Shown here: in pieces, positions 13,345 to 64,000 of the stretch | Numbering within the stretch: the stretch's first letter is position 1 | Layout: each line of letters starts with the position of its first letter | Source of the DNA: Trichosphaerium sp. ATCC 40318 | Lineage: Eukaryota > Protista > Tubulinea | Direction of reading: 5' to 3' | Assembly: GCA_038496445.1 (NCBI GenBank) | Contig: JALMLS010000354.1 | Span: 1 to 64,000, forward strand | Length of the DNA stretch: 64,000 bases | The notes under the pieces: generated by a model | What the model was told of the DNA's origin: nothing | Seen by the model: only the letters and a program-made list of their open reading frames with translations | Databases searched by the model: none | Program-made: the position numbers and the translations under genes

Positions 13345-15642
13345 ATGCTGCGCTATGGCAGTCCCGTTACATGGTATAAACGGGTAAACAGTAGACGTAA
13401 AGGAAATGTATTTCCAAGTCAACCAAGAGCCTTCTACGCCTCTCATGACGCAGAAAAAGCTCTAATTTCGAGTGTAGGCATTGTTTTAGTTATTAGTTTT
13501 AATATGTTTAGCTAACAGCGAAATTAAATATCAAAAACCCTATAGAATGGTATAATGTATCTAAATCTGATATTTTGAGCGTTGGAGGAGCAAGTATACT
13601 CAGGTTGTCAACTCAAACGCTTATTCTCGAGTATAACATACCACAATAGCGTTCATAACAATTCCTTGGCGTCAATTTTATCCGTTGTACATCCAAAACA
13701 CGATTGGCACCCTTGGAAATTCCGTACGCTTGCTTCCTTTATATTTCATTCAGTGACAAGCAAAATAGGTGTTTGCACACCTGGATATTGGGAAGATGCC
13801 GAAAATATCCGATTATTTGCAAAACACGTGCGTACAAGTACTCAACAAAACAAGATTAATGTACAATAAAAGGTTATAAAAGAATACAATCTTCAGGCTT
13901 TATCAGGATGGTACAAGGTTAATTTAACTCAAATATACGATGCTGGAGGTCGCGCATTAATAACTCAGTACGTTGCTGGTCATATAGCTTGCCAGCTTAT
14001 GTTCTTTTAAGGCATTATCGAGGTTGTTTGTACTCGTTAGTATGTGACATTTACCCAGATAGTGAATGGCACATTTGGAAGTTTCGTATGAATTAGTACC
14101 TACCACAATCTTGGTTCTGATAGCTCTTTTGTTCAGGAACTACTAAAGCTTCTGTGTTTAAACGCAAGGATACTATTGTTGATTTTATTAAAGATGTAAG
14201 GTATTATAATTTATTTTTTCAAGTTTGATTGTTTTATTTTTTTATTCATTTGTGCGGTTTTTCTTTAGGCTGAATTGCAGCTTCACATACAAGATATTTC
14301 TGATTGGCGTAGAATTGAGTACAAAGATATTGTAGGTATTCACGGTGGTCATTTATTGAAGTAAGCTCACAATTACTTGGTTGTTTTATTTACTGTTTTT
14401 TTATTAAGGCACTTTAATAATTCTCTTGAAGACGTTCTTGCAATAGTTTACCCTGAGTTTCACTGGCCTCAACGTCAACCTTGTACGATTAAATTGTATA
14501 TCGTTGCACCACTAAAATAACTTTCAAAGTGACTTATACTGGCTTGGACAACTATGTCATTAATTTCATGGAAGATGTACTCAAAATTTTTGATGAAATT
14601 TATAAGTATTCCTTCATGCTGAAATAGTACTTCTAGGCGAGTAAATTATGGCGTGTTTGTATGCTATCTGATTGGTACAATATCACTACACAACATTTTA
14701 GTGAGTTGCGTGGTGTAGGAGTACTGAAGTACGCTCTAATTGTTTTAACAGTTTTTTGTAAGCATACTCATTCAACTAGTCGCTTTGGTGGATCTTTACA
14801 AGAGTTGCTTACTTGCATGTTCCCAGACTATGAGTGGATCCCATGGAACTTTGGTAATACATTAATAACCATATTTCAAAAAACAGATGTAAGCGGGCTC
14901 CTCTGTTGACACGTTTTTAGGTCGAGTACAAAGAAATTTTTGGGAACAACTAGAAAATCAACAGCACTTCATCAGAACGGTAATTAATCAAAGTAACTAG
15001 TGTCTAATGTTCTCAAAGGTTGAAAGCAAGTGTAAAGTACGTTATCTCGATGATTGGCATCACGTGAGCATCAATACAGTACGAGAAATTGGAGGTTCTG
15101 CATTACTAAAGTGCGTGGTTTTTTTTTTTCGGTTAGGCTCTTGTTTCTCTCTTGTGCCCTTTATACAAGCCTAACAACAAAGATTAGTGCGTCAGGCGGT
15201 TCGCTGTATAAATTACTTCAAACGGTATACCCTGACTATGATTGGCTTGTTAAGAACTTCAAAAAGCCTCCAAATTTTTGGCTTAAGAGGCGTAATATCA
15301 GATGGTTCTTGGGTACATTAAAGCCAAAATTACGTATTAAAACAGAATCTGACTGGTATCGTGTTTCAAATAATCAACTAGCATTACATGGAGGTAGCGG
15401 GTTATCAGCTCATTGGCCTCAGGCGTTGTTAAAGGCATACCCTCATTTTGATTGGAGATTAGAACAATTTGTAGGTATAGATAGGCGTGCTGTTCAAAGG
15501 TACGCTTCATAAGACAAGCACACTGCGTTAGAAGTCTTTTTTTTTCAGTGGACAGCGTTGATGACTAACTTTGCTTTTTTGTTTTATTAGATTGCTTGTG
15601 TTGCTTACAGGCGAGTTATTTCGCCAGCAGACTTCTTTGTAG
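13345..15642 (+). CDS. DWY/YP-W tandem-repeat protein, paralogue A (6 repeat units, no nuclease domain), many exons
   Basis: Spliced repeats such as EWYNVSKSDILSVGGASIL-SVHNNSLASILSVVHPKHDWHPWKF-RVCTPGYWEDAENIRLF. Arg-rich N-terminus. Ends DRRAVQR-LLVLLTGELFRQQTSL*. Confidence 0.8.
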
Positions 15643-15904
15643 CTTGTTTAACAAACGTTACCAAAAAAATGTACCATAAAACTGTTGTACTTTCTATGAA
15701 TTAGTATAGCGTTAAACTGGCTCAATACGCTTGTTATGCGTTCATTCCCAAAAAACAAAAAAACTGTTATTCGGTTGTTTTCGCGTTACATTTATCGTTT
15801 AATGTAACGAGAAGCTTATAACGTAGCATGGCGGGTGACTAAAAAGATATTGTACTTTGTTTGACCTGTAGTTTGCTTTGTACTCGCCTCAGACTCTACA
15901 AAGC

Positions 15905-23932: not shown

Positions 23933-25021
23933 TCACTGGAGAAAATGGTCTTCTGGGTTACTTTCTGGTTCAAATATAACACCAAGCCTATCTTCAATAT
24001 CTGAATCCCAATCGAAGTCATGTATATATCCCCGAAAAACTTTTAAACAATCGCAACTTGCCAGAAAATCAATACAATCATTTGACAGATTAGAACAACC
24101 ATAAACGCAAATAAACTCAGCATTATGCAACTGACAAATACCATCATCTGTAATGTTATTGTTGTAATGAATTGTCAACTTTTTGACTTTTTTCAAAACA
24201 TGAAGCCATTCATCTGTTGCATGTGGTCCCAGATGTATAGTATGAACATTGCAGATACACTTAATACCTTCTAAAGTTATACAGGTACATCCTCCCAAAT
24301 CAATTTCATGGACAGTTGTGAGTACCTTCAAAGACTCGTCTGTAATGTTTGTATGGCTCAAATCTATTGCATGAACACTTGTTGTTCCTTTTGTGAGTGC
24401 TTTAATACCTTTGTCTGAAATGCTAGTGCAGCTTAAATGTATAGTGTGTACGCCAGATAAGCATTCTAATCCATCATCTGTAATGTTAGTTTCAGTAAGA
24501 TTGATGGTATGTACACCAGCAAGGCACATAATACTCTCTTTTGATACATCACATGTCTCAAGATTTATTGTATGTATCCCTGAAAATAGTCTAATAACAT
24601 CATAACATGCATCGACTGGCAACATCAAGTCATGTACACCAATAATAGCTTTATAACCTTCTACACTTGCGCATGTATGACAAGCGCTAATGTGCAATGT
24701 ATGTACGCCCTTGAGACAAACTAAATGCGCATCAGAGAGCCAAGAAGCACTTTGGGCATCATATTCTTTCCCAAGTTTTATTTTTGTGTTTTTGAGCAAT
24801 GGGCTTCCTTTTAAGAACGCAAACATGCTCAGTTCCGGCTCTTTTGTTATTAATATAAAATCTAATCCTATATTGGTGCGAATGATATCTTTGAAGCGGT
24901 GAGATACAGCAGAAGCTGTAATTCTTGATTGTCGTGGTAAAAAGTATAAAATATGGCTCAATATCTCAGATGGAACATAGCACGCATAATTTACCCGTTT
25001 TACTACTCGTTTCGCGGCCAT
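23933..25021 (-). CDS. F-box/LRR protein, intronless
   Basis: F-box VPSEILSHILYFLP...SAVSHRF; ~21-aa LRRs LAGVHTINLTETNITDDGL. Confidence 0.9.
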   Translation of the reverse strand: MAAKRVVKRVNYACYVPSEILSHILYFLPRQSRITASAVSHRFKDIIRTNIGLDFILITKEPELSMFAFLKGSPLLKNTKIKLGKEYDAQSASWLSDAHLVCLKGVHTLHISACHTCASVEGYKAIIGVHDLMLPVDACYDVIRLFSGIHTINLETCDVSKESIMCLAGVHTINLTETNITDDGLECLSGVHTIHLSCTSISDKGIKALTKGTTSVHAIDLSHTNITDESLKVLTTVHEIDLGGCTCITLEGIKCICNVHTIHLGPHATDEWLHVLKKVKKLTIHYNNNITDDGICQLHNAEFICVYGCSNLSNDCIDFLASCDCLKVFRGYIHDFDWDSDIEDRLGVIFEPESNPEDHFLQ

Positions 25022-27832: not shown

Positions 27833-28804
27833 TCAGAACGGGAAATATTTTGCTTTAGTGTGCAAATTCACACGTGTGTATCTTCTTATTGTTTGGATGC
27901 ATTGCTCTGTTATGTGACAACCTGTTATATTGACTGTATGAGCACTTTTGAGTGGTATGATATCTTGATTTGTGACACTTGTATCTGATAGCTCAATGTT
28001 GTGTACACCTGCCAATACCTTAATTCCTTCGTCTGTAACTTTTTCGCAATACGCTAAGTTAATGGTATGAGTTCCAGCAAGAGCAAACAATGCTTCATCT
28101 GTTACGTTTGTGTTTGATAAATCAAGTTCGTGTACGCCCGCCAATGCTTTAATACCTTCATTTGTAATTAGTCTACAATCTGCTATGTTAATAGTATGAG
28201 CTCCAGCAATAGTAAACAGCGATTCATCTGTTATCCAAGTATTCTTTAAAGAGATTAAGTGAATTGAATTTGTATTGCCTACTAGTGCTTTGATTCCTGA
28301 ATCTGTTACTGCCGTGCGTTCAAGATAAATAGTATGCACTCCTCTCAAAGCTGATATGCCTCTATCACTGATGTTACTGCAATGTGTAAGGTTAATAGAG
28401 TGTACACCTTGCAATGCAATCAACCCAGCATCTGAAACTGTAGTGCCACTCAAGTTGATTGTATGAACACCAGCAAGAGAAACAATGGAAATGTTACTAA
28501 ACTTGGTGTTTGACAAATCGATGGTATGTACTCCAGCAAGCATTTTTATAGCTCTAGTATTCATACGAATGCTACTAGCAAGAGGATCGACTATTGTTAT
28601 ATCTATATTTTGGAGCAGCTGGCTACCAGAAAGGCGTTTGCACTTATAACAATGGCCTATACTGATTTTCCCATAGTGGAAATGCACGTGAACAATTTGA
28701 CAAAGTAGTGAGCACGTTAATCGTATACATCGCAGCGACACACCAGGTAGAAATTGTAAAATACTAACTAACATCTCTGTAGGCAACTCATCCATTATGT
28801 TCAT
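27833..28804 (-). CDS. F-box/LRR protein, intronless (paralogue of 23933-25021)
   Basis: F-box LPTEMLVSILQFLP...LTCSLL; about 11 LAGVHTINLS-type LRRs. First in-frame ATG at 28804. Confidence 0.9.
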   Translation of the reverse strand: MNIMDELPTEMLVSILQFLPGVSLRCIRLTCSLLCQIVHVHFHYGKISIGHCYKCKRLSGSQLLQNIDITIVDPLASSIRMNTRAIKMLAGVHTIDLSNTKFSNISIVSLAGVHTINLSGTTVSDAGLIALQGVHSINLTHCSNISDRGISALRGVHTIYLERTAVTDSGIKALVGNTNSIHLISLKNTWITDESLFTIAGAHTINIADCRLITNEGIKALAGVHELDLSNTNVTDEALFALAGTHTINLAYCEKVTDEGIKVLAGVHNIELSDTSVTNQDIIPLKSAHTVNITGCHITEQCIQTIRRYTRVNLHTKAKYFPF

Positions 28805-28828
28805 TCCTGGGCAAAACACGTCAGCAAG

Positions 28829-30629: not shown

Positions 30630-31663
30630 ATGAGCTGGGGTACTGAGTGTGTTACCAGCATGTTTATTTATTAATATAGAATAGAGGACGACGATTTTGA
30701 CCCTACACCACTAAAAAACACCAGCATTGGCGTAAATAGTGCTTCTAAAAAGCAAAGGAGCGTTGAAGAAGAGGAAAAAGCCGTTTCAATGTCAGAGCCT
30801 TCAAATACTCCAAAAGCGACCCAAAAACGCACAAAAACTGAGTATCAAAGCAAACAAGCCAATCAAACCAAAACAGTAACACAAAATTCTAACGACGGTC
30901 ACAAAACCACAAGTGAAACAACTGAAGCTCCTCAAAACATTAAAACCAAACGTAACAAATCAAGAAAAAAACAGAACGCACAAAACAAAGATGTACGTAG
31001 CATAAGCATCCTATCCTATGCCTTAACCTTCTTTTAAAGAATGATGCTGTCATTCTAGTACCTCCAAAGCAGTTGACACTAGTACCATACGATAGAGTAC
31101 GTGATCATTGGCCTAAACTAGGGAACCATATTATCGCATCGTACACAGATACAGCTGTACTTGTGTATCAAGCGTTTAATGATAAGATTGCGGATTATGC
31201 ATTGAAGCATCAGAAGTTCGATGGTTGCCCTTCATACAACACAACAAGAATGACATGGATAAAAACAAACTTTCTATGGATGATGCACAGAAGCCTATAT
31301 GGGTCTAAAAAGAACCAAAACAGAGTTCTTGGTCTATGGCTTAAGAAATCTGTTTTCGATGAGATTTTAAGCAAGGGTAGACTTAAGGGTAAAGGTGCGG
31401 GCAAGACAAGAGTACAGTGGGATCCAGATTATACTCCAGAGTTCCTTGTTCTTAAAAGAAGAAGAGATATTCAAATTGGTATTAAAGGAAGAGATAGCTT
31501 TAGAACAGGCGAAGATTTTGTTGCTATTGTTGATTGTAGTCAATTGGCACGTGAATCAAAGGCTACAAGATCTATACCTGATGAACGTGTTTATACGCCT
31601 ATTGACAAAGAAGTATATGAAAATCTAGGGTTGGATAAGTTTAACAGTAAGACCAAGAAATAA
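30630..31663 (+). CDS. DUF4291-domain protein with low-complexity N-terminus (3 exons)
   Basis: VYQAF...RMTWIKTNFLWMMHRS...K.NQ.RVL...RVQWDPD...RRDIQIG. Confidence 0.88.
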
Positions 31664-35897: not shown

Positions 35898-38471
35898 TTA
35901 CTGCTGCGCACAAAGTGTGTTATGATGCTTACTATCAACGGACATAGCATAACCACGTTTGAATTCATAAATAAGGACAGCTAAGCTCTTTTCATCCACA
36001 TTTTTAGCGAGATTGTGTGTCGTCTAAGGCAAAGACATTAATTTCAATTCCAACAGAGAAAAAAAAGCTGTAAAAAAAAAAAAACTGTTGCTTGACAGCT
36101 CTAATGCTCACCTCAAAAGGATCTTCAACAGCCAAAAAATAATGAAGCTTCTCTTCATCCTTCTCTAGTGTCCATTCCTTCTCAGTTTTGCTCAAACGCT
36201 TACCATACTTTACACTAACAACAGAATTTTGATAATCAAAATCATACGCATACTGTCTAAAAAATCCTGCAACCAATCTTCCCGTAGACTCTCTATTGGC
36301 TCCAAAAGATACACGCACTTTTCTAATGTCTGTGTAATAAGAACAATCAAAACCTGAAATCTCAACATGTTCCATATCATCTTTATGATATGATTGAAGA
36401 CAAGGAAGAACTGGAGAAGGTAACATTTGAAGGTAGTTGATGCACATCATAACCAAGCAATAAGACGATAACGTTCCTTCAAATACACTATTTATAGACC
36501 GTGCTCGAGCCCAAAATTTTAAAAAGTACGCTATAAAAAAAGAAGATAAGAAGACTGAACCAAAAAACCAGAAACAAAAAGTTTCAAAAAAAAAAATGTG
36601 TAAAATCGAAAACGCACCAAGCTGTTGTGCACGTGTGTCTACAAGCATATAATCCCTAACTAAGTTTGTGTTCTGTACAGCAAGCCTATTATTAAGGCAA
36701 ATATCACAAGATAACCTGGTATCAGCATCTACAATCTTGACAATAGGTACACGTGCACGATGTAAATCCATCACCTTTGTAACGGAATCCTCTAAAAATG
36801 TTTGGTCAGAAAACGCTAATGAAACACGTGAAACGCACCTTTACGCAATCTCTCGGCCATATCATGAATAACATCAGAATACTCTTCTGGTTTTACTTTA
36901 AGTTTAAATACAGTGACATCTATTACAAAAAAAAGTCAGCGAAAGTCGTGATCACTTTAGAAAACGAGAATATTCAACAAACGAAAAAATGATGATGTAA
37001 TCGTACCTAGGTCAGCACTTCTCATACCCAACCCTGACGCTGTAGAACCAAAAGGTTTCACTTGTGGACCTTGATCTTCATACCATTGGTTCATCCACTT
37101 TTGGAGTTTCTCAAGCAACTGTTTCCACTTTGCTTTGTCCTGGTCTGTTGCTTTTCTCCTGTTAAATACTTTGGCAACCTGTGTCGACAGCTGATCACTT
37201 GTCAACCTGTCTACAGATACCTTCTCTTTAGGTCTATGCCAAGGCATAGGCTTCCACCCACCACCTTGTATACGTTCGTCTACTGTCCTTAAAGCACCTC
37301 TGCCTCTGCCACGACCGCGAACTGAGTTCTTTCTCTTCTTATTTGTATTTTTAGCATTATCTATGCCTCTGTCCTTGTCAATCCATCGCTTGCCTTTTTT
37401 GCCCTTGTTCTTGTTTCCACTACGATCTTGGCCTTGTCTACCTTGTTGACCTTGTCGTCCTCGTCCTCCTCGACCTTGGCCTTGATTTTGACGACCATTA
37501 TTATTTGAAGCAGGCTTGGTTCGTCCTCCTTTGTTTTGTGTCTGCTTTCTTTGGTTACCTCCTTTTTTGTTTGATTGCGTGGGTGCCGCTCCAAGTTTAG
37601 GATAATCAGAATCTAGTTTATCTTGCTTTCCACGCTGCTTAACCGGTTCTGCACCCAAGCTTGGAAAAGAAATGTCATCAACAGCAATCACATTCTGTTG
37701 CTCTTTTGGATGCGATTGTTCCGGCTGCCTCTTCTTTACTTCCTTCTTACCACGCCCCTTATTATTGTTGCGTCTCTGGCCTTTTTGTTGACCTTGTTTT
37801 CCTTGCTTAGATTGCTTTCCTTGTTGTTTTGCATGTTGCCCTTTTGATCCCTGTTGTTGCTTTTGCTGTTTTTGTTGTTTTGGATCTTTTTTTGGTTGTT
37901 CATTTTCCTTGACAGGTTTCGGTACAACCTCTCCCTGTTGTGATCCTTTCTTCACTTGGACTTCATTTGATTGTTGTTGCGTTAATACCACTGGTTCTGG
38001 CGGAGTAACAAGTCGTGGAGACTCCCTTTTTTGTAACTCTTGAATACCTTTACTTACAATCGCTTGAACATCAAATGGTTCCGCAGCTTGTTGTTCATTA
38101 CCATCCTTTTCATTAGCGTTTTGTCTGCTCCCGTGCTGATTTTCGCCCGTCTCAGAGAGTGAAGCAGGGTTCATCTGACCCTCAATATCGGCCAAAGAGA
38201 ATGTACCTTTTAAATGAACTAAAGGAGGTCCAGGACGTGGCGGCATCATACCAGGAGGAAATGGAGGCATATGACCATGAGGAGACATATGGGGAGGTCC
38301 ATGAAAACCTTGCATAGGAGGCCAACCATAACCTGGAGGCGGTCGAGAGAAGTTGCCTGGTGGAGGTCCATAAGGTTGATAGAACTGTTGAGGAGGCCAT
38401 GCATTGAAACCAGGAGGTGGAGAAGGGTGACCAGTCCGATCCTGAGGTTGTTGATGGCTATTAGGATGCAT
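35898..38471 (-). CDS. Cid1/URT1-type terminal uridylyltransferase with long disordered N-terminus (multi-exon)
   Basis: PFGSTASGLGMRSADL(D), ARVPIVK, CDICLNN, GTLSSY, and EDPFE-TTHNLA with His at the position equivalent to the Cid1 UTP-selecting His. Confidence 0.88.
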
Positions 38472-39280
38472 GGGTATTCCTTTATTTAAGAGTGTTAGCA
38501 GATGACAAAAAAAGGAAAGAAGTGTTAATTTAAGTAAGAGACGTGGCCACACGCCAATTGTGGCGAAAAAAAAAAAATCGTGTTTGGGAAACGGGTGTTA
38601 AAAATGAAAGTAGCGCGCTAGCGTAGGAATAGTGCATAGCTACAACCATTTCAAGCGCGATAAAGCGTGTTGTGACACTTTTGCTTAAAACGGTAAATTA
38701 ATGCGTTTGATGCGTACTTGGATCGAGGGGAAGTGGTAAATTGAACAGCTGGCTCAAAAATGATTGGTCTCCTGGACGTAGGTTTTCGAAACCATAAAGC
38801 GCCAGTAGCGATCGTATAGCGCCAGGGTGTTCCTTTTTGATCGGTTAAACATGGTATGGGTTTAGTGTTTACGTACTTGCTGAAAAACTGTCGGAAGCCA
38901 CGTTAAATAAGTTCCGTGCGTCTCAGCGCCGATTGGCAACTTTTTTTGTAGCAAGATAAGATTACCCTTTTCAATACTCTGTAAGCTCTTGCAGCACTAT
39001 CAAACTAACATTACGACCACAAACAGGTTACGCTAAGTACCTGTGTGTTATTACTTGCGTATGTTATCCTAAAAACAGGACTAGGTACGCTTTGTTCCAT
39101 TCAATAGCTTATGAGCTGATAGGAATACGTTATGCCTTAAATTCTGTAAGTCGCAACAAGTGACACTTGACACAAATGTCTGATATTCTATTGTACGCGA
39201 TAGAAACCACTAGCAAACCTCACAAACAAAAAACTGTAGACAAGCGGGTAGATAATATAGAATCTATTCTAACAAGCTTT

Positions 39281-42200: not shown

Positions 42201-44711
42201 TTTCAATTGAAAACAAGTTTGTACTTGATGAAGTTGTTCGACTTCCTCCAATGCTTGAATTAGTTGCTGCATCTTACGACCTGATACTGTTGTATCGTTA
42301 TAATCTAATTCGATAATCTAAGACCATTTTAGTTTATGCGTCATGTTCAGCAGTAAGTACTTACTTGTTTCGAGATTTCACTAAACCAGTTTTTTAAACC
42401 ATCATTAGTTGTTACTTTAATCAGTTCACCATATTCTCCACCGAAGACTTTACCCAAATCAGCAGCTCTATTTTATACAAAACATAAGTAAATTGAGCAT
42501 CACAGAGAAGTAAGAAAAAAAACGCACTTGTCGCTACTCTCTTTCTTCAATTTGTTCCATTTTTCTTCTTTTGTCCTCAAAAAATCCAAAAAAGCGTTTT
42601 TCAAAATAAACTCAAACTGTGCTGTATTGAGCAACAATAACAACAACTTGCTCTTGTCCATGCCTTTGATACTCAATTAATAATCAAGTAATAGCGAATA
42701 AAGAAAGATGTACCCTTGTTCATAATATCAGCAATCTTGGCATTGCAAGTTGTGTTTGTGTCTTTTCTGAAGTCAAGGAAATTGAAATACAAAATCCAAT
42801 GGTGCTAAAAGAAAAAAAAAACAAAGAAAAAGAAGGATACGCAAGATGAGCCATCTCAGGGTTGCATTACAATCGCGAAGTACACCCATAAGAGTATTTC
42901 GTTTCTGTAGGATAAATCGCTCTACGAGGACACCTTCACTCAATAGACCTCCCTCACCTATAACTTAGTTAACAACATGTTTGGAAAATGAAAAAAAAAA
43001 ACAAGTCAGTACCCATCAACACTTTTAACATCTCAGCTCCTTTTCTCAAGTGTAATGCTTTCAATTTAGTGACATTTTCAGGTCTCAATGTATTCGCTAA
43101 TGCGTTCTTTGCAGCAGTATAAGGAGCCCTTGATACCAAGAAATTAATACAATGGAGACCTACTTTTTCGAATACAAATTTGTCTTACCAGGCACTTCCC
43201 AAGTCAACAATGAAACCTAGATAATAGACAATAACCCAATTATCTGGAAAGTGCTTATCTACAATCTCACGCATGATAGCCTATCATAAAATTTAGGTTG
43301 GTACGGTGAATACACCAACAAAAAATTAAACAAAAAAGAATGACGCACTGGCTCTTCATTTAGTATGTCTGGAGCAAAATATAGAATGATGTAAAGCATT
43401 TGTGCTTGAGTTGACAAAGCAGTTGATCTATGCATTGGTTTTGGATATGCCTAGAAAATGTCATTAGCTGTGAAACAGTATTTTCGAGAATTTACAAAAA
43501 AATGAAAGAAAACCGAAGAATTGCTTACTTGGACGTAGTTATAAATGTCATCTGTTCTTAACCGTGCGACAATCATCTCAACTACCTAGCAAACAAAGTG
43601 GTAAGTATAAACACAAAGAAATATAAACGCGAATTGGAGTACCTTCTTTGGAACGCTAACACGTGAGAAGTACATTTCAGGATACTTTGCTGGTCTCTTC
43701 CTGCCCTTTTTCGCGTTTTCAGCATACCCTGTTCTCGCGCAAAGCTTACAAACTTCATCAATAAGCATGACTTCATTGGAACCCTAAAATAAAAGCAGTT
43801 AGACATGCTCACTTGTTTAACTTTAATCGAACATTTTTTACGTGTCAGTCAATAGGTTGTAACGTACAATGTATCTCAAGTATGAAATAAGCATACGCTC
43901 CCTTACAACACCAGGTATACGAAGATCGAGAAGGATAAGCATAACACCAAATAGGTATAAACCCTCTGTTATTAATTGTTTACCATCAGAGTCAGTCAAA
44001 ACATTCTAAAGCGAAAGTAAACAAAAAAAAAGCAACATGTGCCAAACAATAAAAAAAAAAAGGATTTTTGATTTCCCACGTGATTGAAACGTACTTCAAG
44101 TGTTTGTTGTATATAAATGCCTTGCTCTATATCCTCAAGCCATTGTACATAATCAGTCACATACTTGTAGATACTCTCAAATAGAAGGTAAAACCTCTTG
44201 AGAATCTCCATATGATTTTCTTTAAACTCTGCGTCTAGTTCTAACAGTTCCTTTTGTCAAGTGAAGGAGAATAATTTTTTTTTTTGGATTTTTTTTTATC
44301 AGCGTTAAAAACGCTGCGAGTCAATTTTATGAGCGTAAAAAAATCAAATGGTAGCGCTGAAGCAGCTTCTGAAAAGTTTGGAATCAACAAAACATTTTGA
44401 AACAAACTTTTCGCTAGAATGTTTCTTGAGTCTTAATCGTTGTTCAGGATACGGCACTGTTCTCTATAATTTGTTCCATGCGATCTGAGTCTTGTACGTA
44501 TTCAAACGCAAACAGAATTTTCTCATACTTTCTGGTAGGGTTCTTCAGTAGTGGTGGGATGTGTGCTGAGAGTCTCAGTAACTCTGCGATTATTGAGTTA
44601 CCACGCGACACAATGCGTAATATCGTCTGCCCACAAACATTTGAGTTATCTAGAGGGATTTTAGAGCGGTGACACGCTATTAAAAACGTTTTCAGTACCT
44701 AAGAATTGCAT
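39281..44711 (-). CDS. WASHC5: Strumpellin, WASH complex subunit 5 (many exons)
   Basis: [62 protein letters not shown]. Confidence 0.96.
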
Positions 44712-44861
44712 AGCTATCAAACAAGCTTCAATACATTAAAAAACGCGGTGTGGATGTCTCGTTAACGTGAAATTTGAGGCGTGACTTGTTACTCTGATTA
44801 AGTGTTGTGCCATTGCTACGCAACTCTATATTGCCACACAATAGGCAAATGACACAACGTA

Positions 44862-47353
44862 ATGATACACAATGGAGTACGAGGTGGTTTGACACGCGTT
44901 TGTAGTAAAAAGCGTTACTGTCGTTTAACGTTGAAAAAGGTACCTTTACGCATGTTTATACGCCAGAAGGAACAGTTACAGTAACAATAAATCATAGAAA
45001 GCAGCAAAACGTTCTTCCACGCGTTCGATTACCACTAGAAAACAGTTTCAACGCCATTGTAAACATTTTAACAAAGTTACACAACAACTTGGCATTACTG
45101 ACCTAGATGAATGGTACAACATTCGAGCATCAGATATAAAGCATATTTTATCTAACGCAGTACTTCAGAGGTACCATAAACAACCTTGAGCGTAAATACA
45201 ATTAATTTCTGTCCTCCCTTATCACTTCATTGTAGCTATGGTAACTCAATTGCTGAGGCTGTAACAACGATATATCCTTGCCATCATTGGCAATTTTGGC
45301 GTTTTGAGCACGTGATTTTCATAGGTGCTTGTAAATAACATTTTCTTTTTTTAGGACTTGTCCTCGAGATAAATGGCAAAGAATTGATTGTCAGCGTCAT
45401 TTTCTTGATGTTATGAGTATCAAACTAGGCTTCAAGAATCTTCAGGATTGGTACAATGCCAGCGGTGAATTAATCAAAATGCATGGAGGTTATACGATGC
45501 TGGATAAGTGTTATAATGGATCATTGTACGAAGCTCTGGTAACCATCTATCCCGAATACAAATGGAAACCTTGGAAATTCAGGCATGCACGCTTCAAGGC
45601 AATTAAACCTTTTGACAATCAACTTATTTTTCATAGATTTGTTGCAAAGTTATTTTGGGAGAATGTAGCAGTACAAAGGGAGTTCATGACAGATATAGAA
45701 CAGAACTTGATGATTAAGGTGTTGGATGACTTCTACAACTTGAACTCTGCGAATATAATAGAACACGGTGGCATTGGGCTACTGCAACAGTACGCTCTAT
45801 ACGATCTTTATGATAGTAATAACATATACATTTTGTTATAGGTATGAAGGGTCTTTAATGAAGATACTACAGGCTTTGTATCCTTTGAGCAAATGGCACA
45901 AGCGGCTATTCAAGTACATTGATTTTTCTTCAGTCGTTATTACATGTTGATGACACTCACAGGAAGAAGTCAGAAAAGCGCATCGTAGACGCTCACAGGC
46001 GTATATTCGAACAAGCAGGTGTTAAACTACGCATACATGAGCTAGATGAGTGGTATAGCATTAATTCTGCAGATATTGCTGACATAGGATTGGATACCTT
46101 CCTGCACTCTAAGTAAACACAATCTTACATTTCAGGTGTCTTAACAACATACATAGATATTCAGCCTCGTTGGCAAGAGGTCTCAGTGCTGCTTTTCCTT
46201 TTCATCCATGGAATTGGAGCTTGTTGGAGTATGTAACCAAGAATAAACTGAGTGTCCTGAGCTTTGTTTTAGAAGTAGAGCACCCCAAGGATACTGGAAC
46301 GATGATGCTCACTTGATAAGTTTTCTGCGTAGGATAGCACCCTCATTGAATGTTATCGAGGCAACGGACTGGTAAGCGATAATGAAGTATGTTTTGACAG
46401 CGCTTACAAAAGATAGGTATAGAGTGTCGAGAAATCAGCTCGTTGCTACAGGAGGTAAGATGCTTTTAATTTTAAAGCTTTTGCAACTCATTAAAAATGT
46501 TGTCTAGCCGCTTCTCAGATGAGCAAATATCCTAAAATCCTAGCAGTAATGCACCCTGAGGTTGATTGGGATTGGGAACGTTTTAGCATAAAAGACAAAC
46601 GTACAGTACAAAGGTACTATTCACAGTTTTTGTGCTTCCAGAATGGACTATAAAGTTATAATTTTTTGTATCTTTTGATCTGACGTGTATTCCTTCTCAG
46701 AGAGCTTGCATTTGCCGTCAAATCTTTATTACCTCATCAAGTTATTATTGAGGAAGAACACCTGCATTATGGAGACTTCGGTTTCTATTTGGATATTTAC
46801 ATTCCTGACTTGAAACTGGCTTTGGAGTATCAAGGTTTTTAGCTTTTTTTTAACCTCAGCTAACATTGTATCCTAAGGAGAGCAACACTACCATGACAGT
46901 GGGTATTTTGGAAGCGTTTATATGTATCAAACACGTGATGTTGAGAAGAAACGAGTTTGTGAAGCATTTGGTATGAACTTGGCTTTTTTACTTTCAAGAA
47001 AAAACTTCTGTGTTCACCAGTTAATGTTTTCTAGACGTCACAGTTGTACCCATACCATATTGGTGGAAAGGCACAGTCGGTGAAATAGCTGCAACAATTC
47101 GTCAATACAGGCACGTGATTACTTCGAGGTTATATAGCCTAACAAATAACAAAACCAGACCTGAAATCCAGTTCAGTATTGAAGCTACTACACCATTGAT
47201 CAAAATACCTTACAACAAGTCGTTTGCACTTGAACGTACGTTCTTAGTTGTTCGCCATGGTAATGACTTATCAAATAAATTCAAGAGACAAATGTCAAGC
47301 CCATGATGAGTCCTCTTCTTGAGCATGATGTAAAGGTAAACAGATGCCACTAA
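44862..47353 (+). CDS. DWY/YP-W tandem-repeat protein with C-terminal PD-(D/E)XK (Vsr/DUF559-like) domain, paralogue B (5 repeat units; 3' end 47306 or 47353)
   Basis: Basic N-terminus; repeats such as LQDWYNASGELIKMHGGYTMLDKCYNGSLYEALVTIYPEYKWKPWKF. C-domain YLDIYIPDLKLALEYQGEQHY...RDVEKKRVC...VVPIPYWW. Confidence 0.85.
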
Positions 47354-47437
47354 ACATTACTTGCATATTTTATACAGAGAAACAAACGATTGAAGTGTAC
47401 TACTACTGTAAACATATATTGTACTTTTGTCTTCAAC

Positions 47438-48078
47438 AAACTTCTTTTGGCCAATCTCTTTTCCAGTCACAAACAGGAAAACTAGTGTTAACACTAAAAG
47501 TTTCTGCGCCTACAAATACTTCCATATCGAAGTCAATAGGAGTCATAAAACGCGTGGCATTATAGTTGTGTTCCATAGTTCAAGGTAAAGCGCGATGATA
47601 AAAAGATCACCAATATAAATCTCAAGTTGCACAATGTTGTCTCCGTTGCATCTTCCAAATGATATTCAATCATATCTATGCACTTTCAACAAGGAAACAT
47701 TTACAAAGTCAAAGGCATCTGCACCAAAATATCGAGCCATTGACATTGGGTATCTAATGAAATACTTGTAAACACCTGCGATTGCGTATCAGTATCGTTA
47801 TTAACTGCCATAAAATAATAGACACTCGAAACGGTAGCCACGTTTAAGAATAACAGTGTTTGTTTTATGCATCTTTTTTGATGGACTTCAACAAGTGCTT
47901 TGTCAAAAAACAGTCTGAATCGCTTTTTGCAAGTAAGGCACTGTAGCGCATTGCGTGTATGTCTTGAAGTGTTTACAAATGACGTGTTGATACACAATAT
48001 ACAGTTTCTTGTTTTTTGGAAAAGGACTTAGCCAAGCTGCGGTTAATAAAAAGCTTCAAGATATGAGATATACTTCAT
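47438..48078 (-). CDS. Hypothetical protein with a possible C2HC zinc finger (exon structure uncertain)
   Basis: CLTCKKRF...VEVHQKRC; plausible GT-AG junctions. Confidence 0.4.
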
Positions 48079-57764: not shown

Positions 57765-58188
57765 TATCTGTCATTTGAAACCCTTTTGCTCGAAAGGTGA
57801 TGTAAAAATTAAAGAAACTACATGTTGTACTTTGTACTAAGTAAAAAATATTTTGAACATTCTGCGCACCAAGGTAGTAGGCCTATTTTGTTCGGGCGTA
57901 CACGACAGTATGTAAGGAAGGTTTTCACCTCCTTTTTGGCGTATACCCTTGACTTCCTTAAACGTACGTTGGCCAACTGATGCAAAGAGGTTTAAAGAAA
58001 GCTCTAGAGGGCTGTGGGAAGCCCAGCGGAGAAATACATCCGCAACATATAGGCAACAATCACGTTTTTTGTCAACAGTTGAGAATAACGTTATAAGAAG
58101 GCGTTTAGTCGCCAACACACATTTTCAATTGGCTTGAAACTTTGACATGAAAATTCGTCTGTCACCAAACATTTTAAAGTCACAACGA

Positions 58189-59458
58189 ATGTTCCAGCAA
58201 CGCCTAAAAGCGTCGTTAATCTGTTTCGCGCTATTATGCCCATATTTTGCGATGAGCATGTTATGCCCAGGCCAATACGCCGGCACACCACCTAGAGACC
58301 ACTCTCCTATACCTACAATTGGAGATTACAACAAAGCGTTGCAAGGGCTTGATATTAAGGATGTAATAGAAGAAATAAGGACAGTAATACATGATTCACA
58401 GGAATGCTGGCCAGCTGACGCGTTTAATGGCGCTCAAACATACGGTCCATTTTTTATTCGCCTTGCTTGGCATTGTTCCGGTAGTTACCGCGAAACTGAT
58501 GGCGCAGGCGGTTGTGGCGGTGGCAGACAACGTTTTGAGCCTGAAAGAAGTTGGGAGGACAACACAAACTTGGACAAGGCTCGTGCACTTCTAGCTCCGG
58601 TCAAGACTAAATATGGAGACGCCTTGAGCTGGGGAGATCTGCTAGTATTCGCAGGAACAGCCGCAATCATCGACATGGGCGGTCCTATTGACAAAATATG
58701 CGCTGGACGTGTTGATGACTCAGATGGTGCAAAGAGCCGCACACTCGGCCCTGGTCCTGAGGCACCTGATTGTCCTGTACAAGGAAACTGCCAAAGACCT
58801 ATTGGAACATCAACGATTGGATTGATCTATGTAAACCCAGAGGGATTCATGGGTAAGTCTTTTGATCTTCTTACTTTTTTTCGTTCTTTTGACTAACTCG
58901 GTTTTTTTTTTAAAAGGCACCCCTGAGCCTGTTAAGAGCGCTTTCCAAGTCCGAGATGTTTTCGGCCGTATGGACTTTGACGATAGAGAGACCGTTGCCT
59001 TGATTGGTGGCGGACACGCTTTTGGTAAATCTCACGGAGCTTGCCCTGCTGGCGCCGGTTTACCACCTAAAGATGACCCACTTAACCCATGGCCTGGTTT
59101 GTGCGGTACTGGTAAAGGTAATGATACGTTCACTAGCGGTATCGAAGGGCCTTGGACGACTAACCCTGATCAATGGGACAATGAGTACTTTAAGCTGCTA
59201 TTGAACCAGAAATACATATTACACAAGGGACCTGGTGACAAGTGGCAATGGAAGATTGATGGCGATGATTCTGGTCGTATGATGATGACCACAGACATCT
59301 CTCTGCTACATGACCCTAAATTCAAAGACCTCGTTGATGAATTCGCTCAGGATTTGGACGCCTTGAATACAGCTTTCGCTGGAGCATGGTACAAGTTGAC
59401 ACACAACGGTGGTGAATGGGCAAGCAACATGAAATGTGCTGACATCAGGTCTTACTAA
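58189..59458 (+). CDS. katG: Secreted catalase-peroxidase (KatG family), N-terminal domain only; one intron at 58853-58916
   Basis: YGPFFIRLAWHCSGSYR, DNTNLDKAR, GLIYVNPEG, FGRM...ETVALIGGGHAFGKSHG, TSGIEGPWT, AWYKLTH. Signal-like N-terminus; alternative ATG at 58147. Confidence 0.92.
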
Positions 59459-62149: not shown

Positions 62150-64000
62150 ATGAGTGTAGCTGCCAAATTGACTAGAAACACAGCTAAGCGTGCAACATGG
62201 GCCAGTCAGATTAAAATCGACGCGTTTACACGAAAGGTTAGGCTTATATTGTACCCTACGCTTACAATTACGCTGTAGATAGAACGAAATTTAAAAATTA
62301 AGCACATTGATGAATGGTACTCAAGAACAGCTCAAGACATTATCCAACACGGCGGAAAGACACTTTTAGAGTGCGTTAACGCACATTATAACTGAAATGT
62401 TTACCAAATACAGCAAAAAAAATGGTTCTCTGCAACAATGCTTAGAGGCTATGTACCCAACTGTCAAGTGGCAGCAATGGGATTTCCGTGCGTCTTATCC
62501 TGTATACAAGCTTTGGTTTTAACATCAGTAGATAAGAAACATGGTTTTTGGAATGAACGGACAGCTAAATCCTTCATTAGACACGTGCGCAAAAAAAAGT
62601 TAAAAATTGAGCTAACGTTAATTTGTTGCAAATCTAGCTCAAAAAAAAGCTTAAAATAAAGAAGTTATCTGATTGGTACAATTGCAGTGCTAGGGATATA
62701 CGAGACCACGGCGGTGGCGGGTTACTGCGTCACATGTACGCGATGATGACAAGACTCGGCTGTTGACACACTCGCTCTTCACTAGGTACAATGGTTCTCC
62801 AATGATGATGTTTCAGAAACTCTATCCTGGATATGATTGGGAACCATGGAAGTTCCGCGCAGCACCTAGAGAGTACTGGAAAAATGAAGATCATTCACGC
62901 GTTTTTTTGATTCATGTACGATTTAAGTACAGTGATGCACTTCACTTCCTCACTTGTATCATAGGTAGAAGAGAAGCTAAACATTAAATCTATAGAAGAT
63001 TGGTATAGTATAACGTACAATGATGTTACTAAATACGGTGGAACAGGAATACTTGCGTAAGTAGTGCAACATGCAGTGTCCGTTTGTATTAACAATCAAG
63101 AAGGTATTTCAATTGTTGTGTCGCTGATTTTTTAGTGCACATGTATCCAGATATTAAATGGGATGCTACAAAATTTAGTGCGCATTGTTGTTGCTAGTAA
63201 AAGTGCTAACTTTAAGAAAGATATTGTTAAACGAAATTACTGGGAGAGTTTGGAAAACCAACGGGAAGAAATTATAAATGCACGTGTCAACATAAAGTAC
63301 TATTTGTTAACATTCGTTGCTTAGGTTGAGAAACGGTTGAATATTTCTAAGCTTGATGATTGGTACGATGTCAGATGGTCTTCTTTGAAAAATGGGCTAC
63401 TGAAGTACGCTTTTTTGTCAAATTGAAAAAAAAGAAAGTTAAAAAAAAAGTTAGCCATCATTCAGCATCGCGATATAATTTATTGAAAACACATTACCCT
63501 GATCATCCATGGGACATATCTAAATTCAGGAAACATACAGGTTAAGACTGGTCTTATCAATCATTAGCTAATGTTGTTGTTGTAGCTTTGAAACCTGTCA
63601 AGTACTGGACGAAAAGTGAAAATGTCAAACCCTTTTTGAAGAGTCTAGAAGGTGTGCTTGGTATCAAATCACCACAAGATTGGTACCGAGTGTCAATTCG
63701 ACAACTTACACAGCTTAATGGAGGAGGTCTTAAACGCCACTGGCCTGGTGTGTTGAGTATGCTTTACCCTCAACTAAAATGGTCAAACACTCCCACAACA
63801 TGTGATGATAAACGATCGGCACAGAGGTAAGTCACTTCAACTTAGTGGCCGAGAACTAAACCATACTAAGATGGCTTATTGAATGTTTACACACGCTGTT
63901 TGATGGTGCAGAGATAATAGAAGAATATAAATTGGGCCTAGTTTCAGACAGTGCAAGAGGAGATTTGGTTATAGATGCTTTTATTCCTTCCGTTAAACTT
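62150..64000 (+). CDS. DWY/YP-W tandem-repeat protein, paralogue C (5 repeat units; nuclease domain begins at window end), partial
   Basis: Repeats such as LSDWYNCSARDIRDHGGGGLLRH-YNGSPMMMFQKLYPGYDWEPWKFRAAPREYW; ends DKRSAQR-WLIECLHTLF...IIEEY...LVIDAFIPSVKL. Confidence 0.85.

What the first reader, a model, noticed from the sequence alone, without database searches (positions are those of the whole stretch)
44862..47353. Tandem-repeat array fused to a PD-(D/E)XK nuclease: candidate natural repeat-programmed nuclease family (three paralogues in the window)
Seen: after splicing, the genes at 13345-15642, 44862-47353 and 62150-64000 each contain 5-6 copies of a ~70-aa unit, [V/A]ExxLxIxxLxDWYxVxxxDIxxxGGxxLLxxYxxSLxxxLxxxYPxxxWxxWKFxxxPxxYWxxxxNxxxF. 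Each ends in a distinct capping repeat (DWYRVSxxQL...D[K/R]RxxQR). In B this is followed by QRELAFAVKSLL...LDIYIPDLKLALEYQGEQHY...RDVEKK...IPYWW, and C shows the start of the same domain. Established: D...ExxGxxH plus RDxxK is the signature of Vsr/DUF559-type PD-(D/E)XK domains. Helical-repeat arrays plus a C-terminal catalytic or nuclease-like domain is the logic of PPR-DYW/SMR, OPR/FASTK-RAP proteins and engineered TALENs. This repeat is not PPR (35 aa), OPR (38 aa) or TALE (34 aa). From memory it resembles the Firmicute DUF4046 repeat, which I have not verified. Inference: a modular, sequence-specific DNA/RNA-binding scaffold with a nuclease effector, expanded in this genome.
Basis: partly seen in the sequence, partly recalled or inferred. 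Interest (0 to 1): 0.88.

Follow-up and report, generated by a model that had tools for sequence, protein, structure and literature searches.

The report
Helical-repeat array fused to nuclease
A spliced, expressed gene of a heterolobosean amoeba encodes five copies of an unstudied 77-residue helical repeat joined to an apparently intact Vsr/RAP-type nuclease; it belongs to a very large uncharacterised protein family that may cut or mark specific DNA or RNA sequences, which nobody has tested.

Summary
Gene B (44862-47353, + strand) is a 16-exon gene. RNA contigs support at least 10 of its 15 short introns, three of which are GC-AG. It encodes 562 aa: a basic, acid-free N-terminus, five ~77-aa repeats, and a C-terminal nuclease domain. 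Gene A has six repeats but stops where the nuclease would begin. Gene C has five repeats plus the start of the nuclease and runs off the window.

The nuclease model matches Vsr, solved RAP domains, I-Bth0305I and DUF559. The Vsr-type catalytic positions are conserved. By sequence it is closest to phage families annotated as homing endonucleases.

The repeat has no solved structural counterpart. Its model superposes on bacterial DUF4046 models, but the Pfam cutoff is not met.

The family is large (3733 cluster representatives) and I found no paper naming DUF4046 or PF13255. Repeat-plus-nuclease is its commonest architecture. Some relatives add a Lig E-like DNA ligase.

Sequence-specific, "programmed" recognition, the substrate (DNA or RNA) and the cellular location remain untested. 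I favour organellar DNA over RNA.

The scan had already noted this family on other pieces of the same genome. Verdict: real and uncharacterised, a new variant of the helical-repeat-plus-nuclease theme.

The parts
44862..47353 (+). Gene B: complete coding region, 16 exons, 562 aa. Exons: 44862-44939, 44998-45170, 45236-45307, 45355-45582, 45637-45789, 45842-45913, 45963-46112, 46157-46228, 46273-46371, 46417-46454, 46508-46613, 46701-46834, 46878-46970, 47035-47110, 47159-47235, 47286-47353.
   Evidence: Assembly and translation. Ten joints seen in RNA contigs, plus one loose end.
44862..45021 (+). N-terminal 34 aa: 11 Lys/Arg and no Asp/Glu. It looks like a presequence and could also be a nuclear localisation signal. 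Includes intron 44940-44997.
   Evidence: Composition. Family N-termini have a median of 5 basic and 1 acidic residue in the first 30 aa. No targeting predictor was available.
45022..46602 (+). Five tandem ~77-aa helical repeats, with introns: R1 45022-45370, R2 45359-45652, R3 45641-45981, R4 45912-46279, R5 (capping variant) 46280-46602.
   Evidence: Repeat HMM hits, E 8e-27 to 4.5e-12. Coordinates, alignment.
46549..47186 (+). Vsr/DUF559/RAP-type PD-(D/E)XK nuclease domain (aa 393-524). Putative catalytic residues: D445 (46792), Q458 and H462 (within 46825-46888), D479 and K482 (46937-46948).
   Evidence: Family nuclease HMM 123.7 bits, E 3e-40. Fold matches come from the model of the homologue P0004. 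Residue mapping.
45583..45636 (+). In-frame 54-nt GC-AG intron. Removing it restores the consensus spacing between W.F and the next FW motif. If retained, the frame stays open.
   Evidence: Joint in an X5 RNA contig. Sequence read.
47111..47158 (+). GC-AG intron whose donor, GCACGTGA, is the same as that of the predicted intron 45308-45354.
   Evidence: Joints in X7 and X1 contigs. Sequence read.
13345..15642 (+). Gene A: paralogue with six repeats (13512-15509) and the capping repeat, truncated where the nuclease domain would begin.
   Evidence: Six-frame HMM scan finds repeats but no nuclease match. Translation. About 29% identity to B. The gene model was not checked against reads.
62150..64000 (+). 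Gene C: paralogue with five repeats (62279-63827) and the first nuclease exon (63860-64000). It runs off the window.
   Evidence: (nuclease HMM E 1.4e-4 on the last piece). About 28% identity to B.

Best explanation
Gene B encodes a nuclear-encoded protein, probably imported into the mitochondrion. Its five rigidly packed 77-aa helical repeats form an elongated recognition surface, and a C-terminal Vsr-type endonuclease is attached to it.

The most likely mode of action has two steps. First, the array docks on a nucleic-acid target; I favour double-stranded organellar DNA. The variable, exposed residues of the long fourth helix of each unit would make the contacts. Second, the nuclease nicks or cuts nearby, using the Vsr/EDxHD-type Asp...Asn/Gln...His...Asp centre.

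Nuclease-less paralogues such as gene A would bind without cutting. Relatives that add a Lig E-like DNA ligase would cut and reseal.

Shown: the gene structure, transcription and splicing, the repeat architecture, the nuclease fold, conservation of the catalytic positions, and the size and architecture of the family.

Inferred: binding to nucleic acid, sequence specificity, DNA rather than RNA, nuclease activity, and mitochondrial location.
For: - Expression: the gene is intact and its splicing is supported by RNA contigs.
- Catalytic positions: D61, E72, G75, H78, D98 and K101 are invariant or present in at least 90% of 59 diverse members. The spacing D-13-N/Q-4-H-20-D parallels Vsr D51/H64/H69/D97 and I-Bth0305I D196/N208/H213/D222, as given in PMC3239194. 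All are present in gene B.
- Sequence relatives of the nuclease: PHROG families annotated homing endonuclease or intron-encoded nuclease, E 1e-14 to 1e-7. More than 461 viral-contig loci share the EY[QH]Gx[QH]H[YF] motif.
- Ligase fusions: relatives from Cavostelium and Physarum add an ATP-dependent DNA ligase. P0157 matches PDB 8u6x at E 1.2e-23.
- Repeat model: the three-unit model is confident and rigid (pLDDT 95.8, pTM 0.86).
- Variable positions: variability concentrates at repeat positions 36, 37, 40, 41, 45, 46, 49 and 50 of the long helix after DWY.V[T/S]. That is an i, i+1, i+4, i+5 pattern.
- Helix-turn-helix hint: the only recurring solved-structure likeness of one unit is the TetR-type helix-turn-helix domain.
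- N-termini: across the family they are basic and poor in acidic residues.
- Architecture: repeat-plus-nuclease occurs in 89 of 167 top relatives. It also occurs in an AlphaFold DB entry named DUF559 domain-containing, A0A3Q9FTI3, with repeats at 165-395 and the nuclease at 397-522.
Against: - No experiment or binding prediction was possible.
- The closest structural neighbours of the nuclease include RAP domains, whose partner repeats bind RNA.
- Net charge is only about +1 per repeat.
- Targeting was judged from composition alone. The basic N-terminus could be a nuclear signal.
- The fold evidence comes from the homologue P0004 (31% identical to B overall), not from gene B itself.
- The homing-endonuclease names in PHROGs are annotations, not tests.
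Confidence: 0.45

Rival explanations
1. The protein is an organellar RNA-binding factor of the FASTK, OPR-RAP or HPR-RAP type. The array would bind a specific mitochondrial transcript or rRNA piece. The RAP-like domain would process or merely hold the RNA, for transcript end formation, stabilisation or mitoribosome assembly.
- UniProt names some family members 'RAP domain-containing protein'.
- The layout is the same: helical array, then a C-terminal RAP-like domain, with presequence-like N-termini.
- Nuclease-less paralogues exist, as with PPR proteins that have or lack a catalytic tail.
Against: - Pfam RAP matches only 1 of 59 nuclease domains, at E 0.035.
- Sequence-level relatives are phage DNA homing-endonuclease families.
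- Ligase fusions are of the DNA-ligase type.
- A 77-aa unit of four to five helices is unlike the 35-40-aa helical hairpins that read single-stranded RNA.
Confidence: 0.3
2. The family is a domesticated or still selfish homing-type or defence-type DNA endonuclease family acting in the nucleus. Possible roles are genome conflict, programmed DNA cutting, or defence against giant viruses. The basic N-terminus would be a nuclear localisation signal.
For: - The nuclease is similar to phage homing-endonuclease families.
- Paralogues are clustered and highly divergent, 25-35% identical.
- Relatives occur in bacteria. A repeat-fold relative in AlphaFold DB (A0A6C0ETA5) carries an accession that I recall, from memory only, as belonging to a viral metagenome.
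- The N-terminus of B contains a KKKAAKR stretch.
Against: - The gene has 15 spliceosomal introns and is not inside an intron, an intein or an evident mobile element.
- Many family N-termini look like mitochondrial presequences rather than nuclear signals.
- None of 80 viral loci carrying the nuclease has the repeat, and the repeat has no BFVD match.
Confidence: 0.12
3. The repeat array is a protein-protein or structural scaffold, like many helical-repeat proteins. The nuclease-like domain would be a non-catalytic adaptor.
For: - There is no direct evidence of nucleic-acid binding.
- Charge per repeat is weak.
- Bacterial DUF4046 proteins are repeat-only and have no known function.
Against: - The catalytic-type residues are conserved in at least 90% of members. 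That argues for an active enzyme under selection.
- The array is repeatedly fused to nucleic-acid enzymes, both nuclease and DNA ligase.
Confidence: 0.08

Closest known systems
Bacterial DUF4046 proteins (Pfam PF13255)
   Same: The predicted fold of the repeat array is the same: TM 0.77 over 228 residues in the ESM Atlas and TM 0.80 in AlphaFold DB. The protein language-model features are also similar.
   Different: The Pfam model does not reach its cutoff on the window's exons or on close homologues. The Bacillota proteins are short (about 260-330 aa), apparently repeat-only, and of unknown function. I found no paper that names the family.
FASTK/FASTKD, OPR-RAP and HPR-RAP organellar proteins
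   Different: The repeat is a 77-aa unit of four to five helices, not a 37-40-aa hairpin. Pfam RAP is not matched. A published survey reported RAP as undetectable in Amoebozoa and Excavata (PMC8190603).
EDxHD / Vsr-like homing endonucleases (I-Bth0305I) and related phage nucleases
   Different: The phage proteins use NUMOD or helix-turn-helix modules, not this repeat. This gene is an intron-rich chromosomal gene, not an intron- or intein-borne ORF.
E. coli Vsr and DUF559 proteins
   Same: The fold and metal-site residues are shared. Foldseek's top hit is 1cw0 at probability 1.0. Many AlphaFold DB neighbours are named DUF559.
   Different: Neither HMMER nor Pfam detects similarity. The sequence shows no obvious Cys/His zinc-site motif like Vsr's. 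The domain is fused to a repeat array.
TALE nucleases, PPR-SMR and PPR-DYW proteins
   Same: The concept is shared: a tandem helical-repeat array carrying a catalytic tail.
   Different: The repeats are unrelated, with no Pfam match. No per-repeat recognition code has been shown here.

Membership tests
DUF4046 (PF13255) | Sequence scores above Pfam's gathering cutoff | tested here: not met
   There is no DUF4046 hit on the window's exons at E<=1 or on ten full-length homologues at E<=0.01. One of 70 three-repeat segments hits at E 0.0095. Precomputed PF13255 hits are listed for a few homologues.
DUF4046 (PF13255) | Same fold as DUF4046 proteins | tested here: met
   ESM Atlas cluster with 100% PF13255: TM 0.77 over 228 aligned residues. 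AlphaFold DB A0A559JGK5: TM 0.80, E 1.2e-6. All of these are predicted models.
RAP domain (PF08373) | Pfam or sequence match to RAP | tested here: not met
   One of 59 nuclease domains matches, at E 0.035. No PDB chain is found by HMM at E<=10.
RAP domain (PF08373) | Fold of solved RAP domains, placed C-terminal to a helical array | tested here: met
RAP domain proteins | Organelle targeting and RNA binding | not testable with these tools
   Only composition is available: 11 basic and 0 acidic residues in the first 34 aa of B, with similar N-termini in relatives.
Vsr / DUF559 / EDxHD clade of PD-(D/E)XK nucleases | Vsr-like fold | tested here: met
Vsr / DUF559 / EDxHD clade of PD-(D/E)XK nucleases | Conserved metal-binding Asp, Asn/His, His and second Asp | tested here: met
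   D61, H78 and D98 are invariant or at least 90% conserved. Position 74 is N or Q. The spacing parallels Vsr and I-Bth0305I. Gene B has D445, Q458, H462 and D479. The correspondence is inferred from spacing and fold, not from a residue-level superposition.
Vsr / DUF559 / EDxHD clade of PD-(D/E)XK nucleases | Pfam DUF559 (PF04480) above cutoff | tested here: not met
   One of 59 members matches, at E 0.03.
DUF2726 (PF10881) | Pfam score above cutoff | tested here: inconclusive
   30 of 59 members match weakly (best E 1.3e-6). The first member scores 18.6 bits against a cutoff of 24.7.
Homing endonuclease (as a functional class) | Encoded within a self-splicing intron, an intein or a free-standing mobile ORF | tested here: not met
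   The gene is a 16-exon chromosomal gene with spliceosomal GT-AG and GC-AG introns.
PPR / OPR / TALE repeat proteins | Repeat of 34-40 aa that matches the family profile | tested here: not met
   The unit is about 77 aa. No such Pfam families appear among the hits.

The most novel reading that the evidence does not exclude
The 77-aa repeats may form a modular recognition code for nucleic acid, making this a new natural programmable scaffold. In this lineage the expanded family, including nuclease-less members such as gene A, could mark sites on the mitochondrial genome that direct co-transcriptional single-nucleotide insertion editing, for example by making the polymerase pause and reuse a template base. 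How sites are chosen in BB2-type G-insertion editing is an open question (PMC5421314). Relatives of the family occur in heterolobosean BB2 and in Physarum, the two lineages named here that are known for insertional editing.
Probability: 0.06. Interest if true: 0.92.

Novelty: new variant of a known kind. Interest (0 to 1): 0.62.

Why it matters
Helical-repeat arrays joined to a catalytic tail (PPR, OPR/HPR-RAP, FASTK, TALE) have explained much of organelle gene expression and have supplied programmable tools.

This one is a further class. It is structurally confident and has a different, larger unit with no solved structure. It is fused to an apparently active Vsr-type nuclease and sometimes to a DNA ligase. 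It has thousands of members in amoebae, heteroloboseans and bacteria, and I found no paper that names DUF4046 or PF13255.

It also places RAP-like domains in Amoebozoa and Excavata, where a published survey could not detect them.

If recognition proves modular, the family would be a new scaffold for targeting nucleic acids. If it acts on mitochondrial DNA or RNA, it becomes a concrete candidate set for unexplained organellar processes in these lineages. The homologue in Dictyostelium (Q54JM7) would give a genetically tractable entry point.

Tried and rejected
- Pfam on single exons of the three genes gave nothing.
- Pfam on full-length homologues gave only weak summed matches to small helical DNA-binding-like domains (Myb_Rap1, SAM-like, CH). 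I do not rely on these.
- An HMM of the nuclease domain against all PDB sequences found no match at E<=10.
- Foldseek of the repeat model found nothing in PDB (best E 1.3) or in BFVD.
- The viral-contig scan with the nuclease domain found many phage relatives, but none of the 80 fetched loci has the repeat. I therefore dropped the idea that the whole fusion is phage-derived.
- Literature searches for DUF4046 and PF13255 returned no paper. Searches for insertional-editing factors and for RAP in amoebae found nothing on this family.
- I could not establish whether the window comes from heterolobosean BB2. The only taxonomic anchor is the DUF4291 gene, whose best hits are Naegleria and Willaertia at 66-69%.
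- The structure models are of homologues, because a spliced window protein cannot be given by reference.
Full report
**1. What is in the sequence**

The window has about 38% G+C, and its coding sequence is broken into many short pieces. One is L.I..L.DWY.V...DI...GG..LL. The other is GSL...L...YP...W..WKF.

For gene B I joined the pieces through short introns and obtained one open frame of 562 aa. The model has 16 exons and 15 introns of 43-87 nt.

Contigs from four public runs were laid on 44700-47500. Some of these runs are labelled RNA. The contigs carry ten of the fifteen joints, and a loose end fits an eleventh.

Three introns are GC-AG.
- 45583-45636 and 47111-47158 are both seen in the contigs.
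- 45308-45354 is predicted. It shares the donor GCACGTGA with 47111-47158.

One contig of run X1 covers 45841-46387 unspliced, so that run also holds DNA or precursor RNA.

**2. The repeats**

I built an HMM from the seven repeats of an independent homologue (P0004). It finds:
- five units in B, with E from 8e-27 to 4.5e-12;
- six in A (13512-15509) and five in C (62279-63827).

The unit is about 77 aa. Its family consensus is P...W....NQR.F.DWL...LG....EDWY.V......GG..LL..Y.GS....L...YP...W..W.F.

The last unit of each gene is a distinct capping variant that ends in D[K/R]R..QR.

The three paralogues are only 25-35% identical to one another. They are as far from each other as from homologues in other phyla.

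**3. The nuclease domain**

B continues after the capping repeat into a domain that matches a family HMM at 123.7 bits, E 3e-40. C shows the first exon of the same domain at 63860-64000 before the window ends.

A does not have it. After the capping repeat, the open frame at 15565-15639 reads ...ELFRQQTSL and the stop codon ends at 15642. No nuclease match follows. The title's 'three paralogues' of a repeat-nuclease fusion should therefore read two fusions plus one nuclease-less member.

**4. The family**

A full HMMER pass over 1.84 billion cluster representatives, using the large exon of B, gave 3733 proteins at E<=1e-3 and 125 at E<=1e-30. None was more than about 43% identical. (That exon later proved to include the 54-nt in-frame intron.)

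Among the 167 proteins I held:
- the median is six repeats and the maximum 23;
- 89 have the repeats-then-nuclease layout;
- 98 of the 102 with a tail of at least 70 aa carry the same nuclease.

Named sources include Heterolobosea sp. BB2, Cavostelium apophysatum and Physarum polycephalum. AlphaFold DB neighbours include a Dictyostelium discoideum protein (Q54JM7), other dictyostelid entries and bacterial entries. One repeat-only member lies in a bacterial-looking metagenome-assembled genome. Every source name is 'hypothetical' or absent.

**5. What the nuclease domain is**

Pfam gives only sub-threshold hits: DUF2726 in 30 of 59 members, and DUF559 and RAP in one each.

An AlphaFold2 model of the domain from P0004 has pLDDT 88.
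- Foldseek places Vsr first.
- AlphaFold DB neighbours are named 'RAP domain-containing' for the family's own members and 'DUF559' for many others.

In the alignment of 59 members, G75 and H78 are invariant. D61, E72, D98 and K101 are conserved in at least 90%, and position 74 is N or Q. The spacing is D-13-N/Q-4-H-20-D. It parallels Vsr D51/H64/H69/D97 and I-Bth0305I D196/N208/H213/D222, as reported in PMC3239194. Gene B has all of them: D445, Q458, H462 and D479.

At the sequence level, the nearest annotated relatives are PHROG families called homing endonuclease, intron-encoded nuclease and a multidomain 'HNH endonuclease', with E from 1e-14 to 1e-7. More than 461 viral-contig loci share the motif EY[QH]Gx[QH]H[YF]. 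In those loci the domain stands alone or follows helix-turn-helix-like N-termini, never this repeat.

**6. What the repeat is**

A three-unit model is very confident (pLDDT 95.8, pTM 0.86). It is all-helical, with four to five helices per unit.

- It has no counterpart among solved structures (Foldseek best E 1.3) or in BFVD.
- It superposes on predicted models of bacterial DUF4046 proteins, with TM 0.77-0.80.
- The language-model search also pointed to DUF4046.
- Pfam's DUF4046 profile does not reach its cutoff.

Across 1097 repeats, the aromatic and proline positions are nearly fixed. The most variable positions are 36, 37, 40, 41, 45, 46, 49 and 50. They lie on one face of the long helix that follows DWY.V[T/S]. 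That pattern is what one would expect of a recognition helix, but it does not prove one.

**7. Other clues**

- Ligase fusions. Relatives from Cavostelium (repeats, nuclease, ligase) and Physarum (nuclease, ligase, repeats) carry an ATP-dependent DNA ligase domain. The Cavostelium tail matches minimal DNA ligases in PDB at E 1.2e-23.
- N-termini. Those of A, B and C, and of many relatives, are basic, rich in Ser/Thr/Ala and almost free of acidic residues. This fits mitochondrial presequences. No predictor was available, and B's stretch could be a nuclear signal.
- Organism. It is a heterolobosean: an intronless DUF4291 gene at 31073-31663 is 66-69% identical to proteins of Naegleria and Willaertia.
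- Editing. Earlier unchecked notes of this scan say the same genome has mitochondrial cryptogenes that need G insertion. That is the editing type described for heterolobosean BB2, where site recognition is unexplained (PMC5421314). I could not verify that link from this window. The family also occurs in dictyostelids, which to my knowledge are not reported to have insertional editing.

**8. Interpretation**

The architecture is shown: a presequence-like N-terminus, a DUF4046-like array and a Vsr-type nuclease. Function is inferred.

I favour a nucleic-acid-targeting endonuclease whose array supplies target choice. I prefer DNA over RNA for three reasons:
- the sequence relatives of the nuclease are DNA homing-type enzymes;
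- the ligase fusions are of the DNA-ligase type;
- the unit weakly resembles a helix-turn-helix domain.

The main rival is an RNA-binding organellar factor of the FASTK or OPR/HPR-RAP kind. It is supported by the structural closeness to RAP domains and by the shared layout. A nuclear selfish or defence nuclease and a non-nucleic-acid scaffold are less likely.

**9. Novelty**

Helical array plus RAP/Vsr-like tail is a known theme, and so is modular binding modules plus a Vsr-like homing nuclease. The repeat itself is an unstudied fold class. It is known only as a bacterial DUF, and I found no paper that names it.

A published survey found RAP domains undetectable in Amoebozoa and Excavata (PMC8190603). 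This family shows that a RAP-like fold is abundant there in a divergent form.

I rate it a new variant of a known kind. It is of solid interest as a lead but not yet a demonstrated 'programmed' nuclease. The scan had already flagged the same family on other pieces of this genome.

Noticed in passing
window 45308-45354, 45583-45636, 47111-47158: Three of gene B's 15 introns are GC-AG, and two of them share the donor GCACGTGA. Two of the three are seen spliced in RNA contigs. GC-AG introns may be unusually common in this genome.
   Followed up: partly
window 45583-45636: The 54-nt GC-AG intron is in frame and has no stop codon. If retained, it would add 18 residues between repeats 2 and 3, a possible alternative isoform.
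   Followed up: no
window 36004-38552 (- strand): This gene has a Cid1-family PAP_assoc domain and an MTPAP-like palm domain (E 2.6e-15 and 1e-10). They follow a long low-complexity region rich in Gly, Gln and Lys. It is a non-canonical poly(A)/terminal nucleotidyltransferase lying between the repeat-protein paralogues.
   Followed up: partly
window 58147-59458 (+): Two adjacent open frames match the haem peroxidase family (PF00141, E 1e-22 and 1.5e-17). From motifs alone they look like a catalase-peroxidase (KatG-type) gene, which is unusual in a eukaryote.
   Followed up: partly
window 23933-25021 and 27833-28819 (- strand): Two paralogous intronless genes encode F-box plus leucine-rich-repeat proteins with a GVHTI.L repeat signature.
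   Followed up: partly
window 15878-16684 (+): This ORF has a signal-peptide-like start followed by about 25 copies of a PTTEA/PTTEV mucin-like repeat. It lies immediately downstream of gene A.
   Followed up: no
window 31073-31663 (+): An intronless DUF4291 gene has its best hits in Naegleria and Willaertia (66-69% identity). This places the genome in Heterolobosea.
   Followed up: yes
P0157 (Cavostelium) and P0166 (Physarum), relatives outside the window: These family members carry a Lig E-like ATP-dependent DNA ligase domain in addition to the repeats and nuclease. The domain order differs between the two species.
   Followed up: partly
P0011, P0034, P0060, P0082, P0153 (relatives outside the window): Some family members end in a different tail of about 125 aa. 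Read in P0011 only, it contains an FEFHGDYWHG motif and matches REase_MTES_1575 weakly. This suggests that the array has been combined with more than one kind of Vsr-like nuclease.
   Followed up: no
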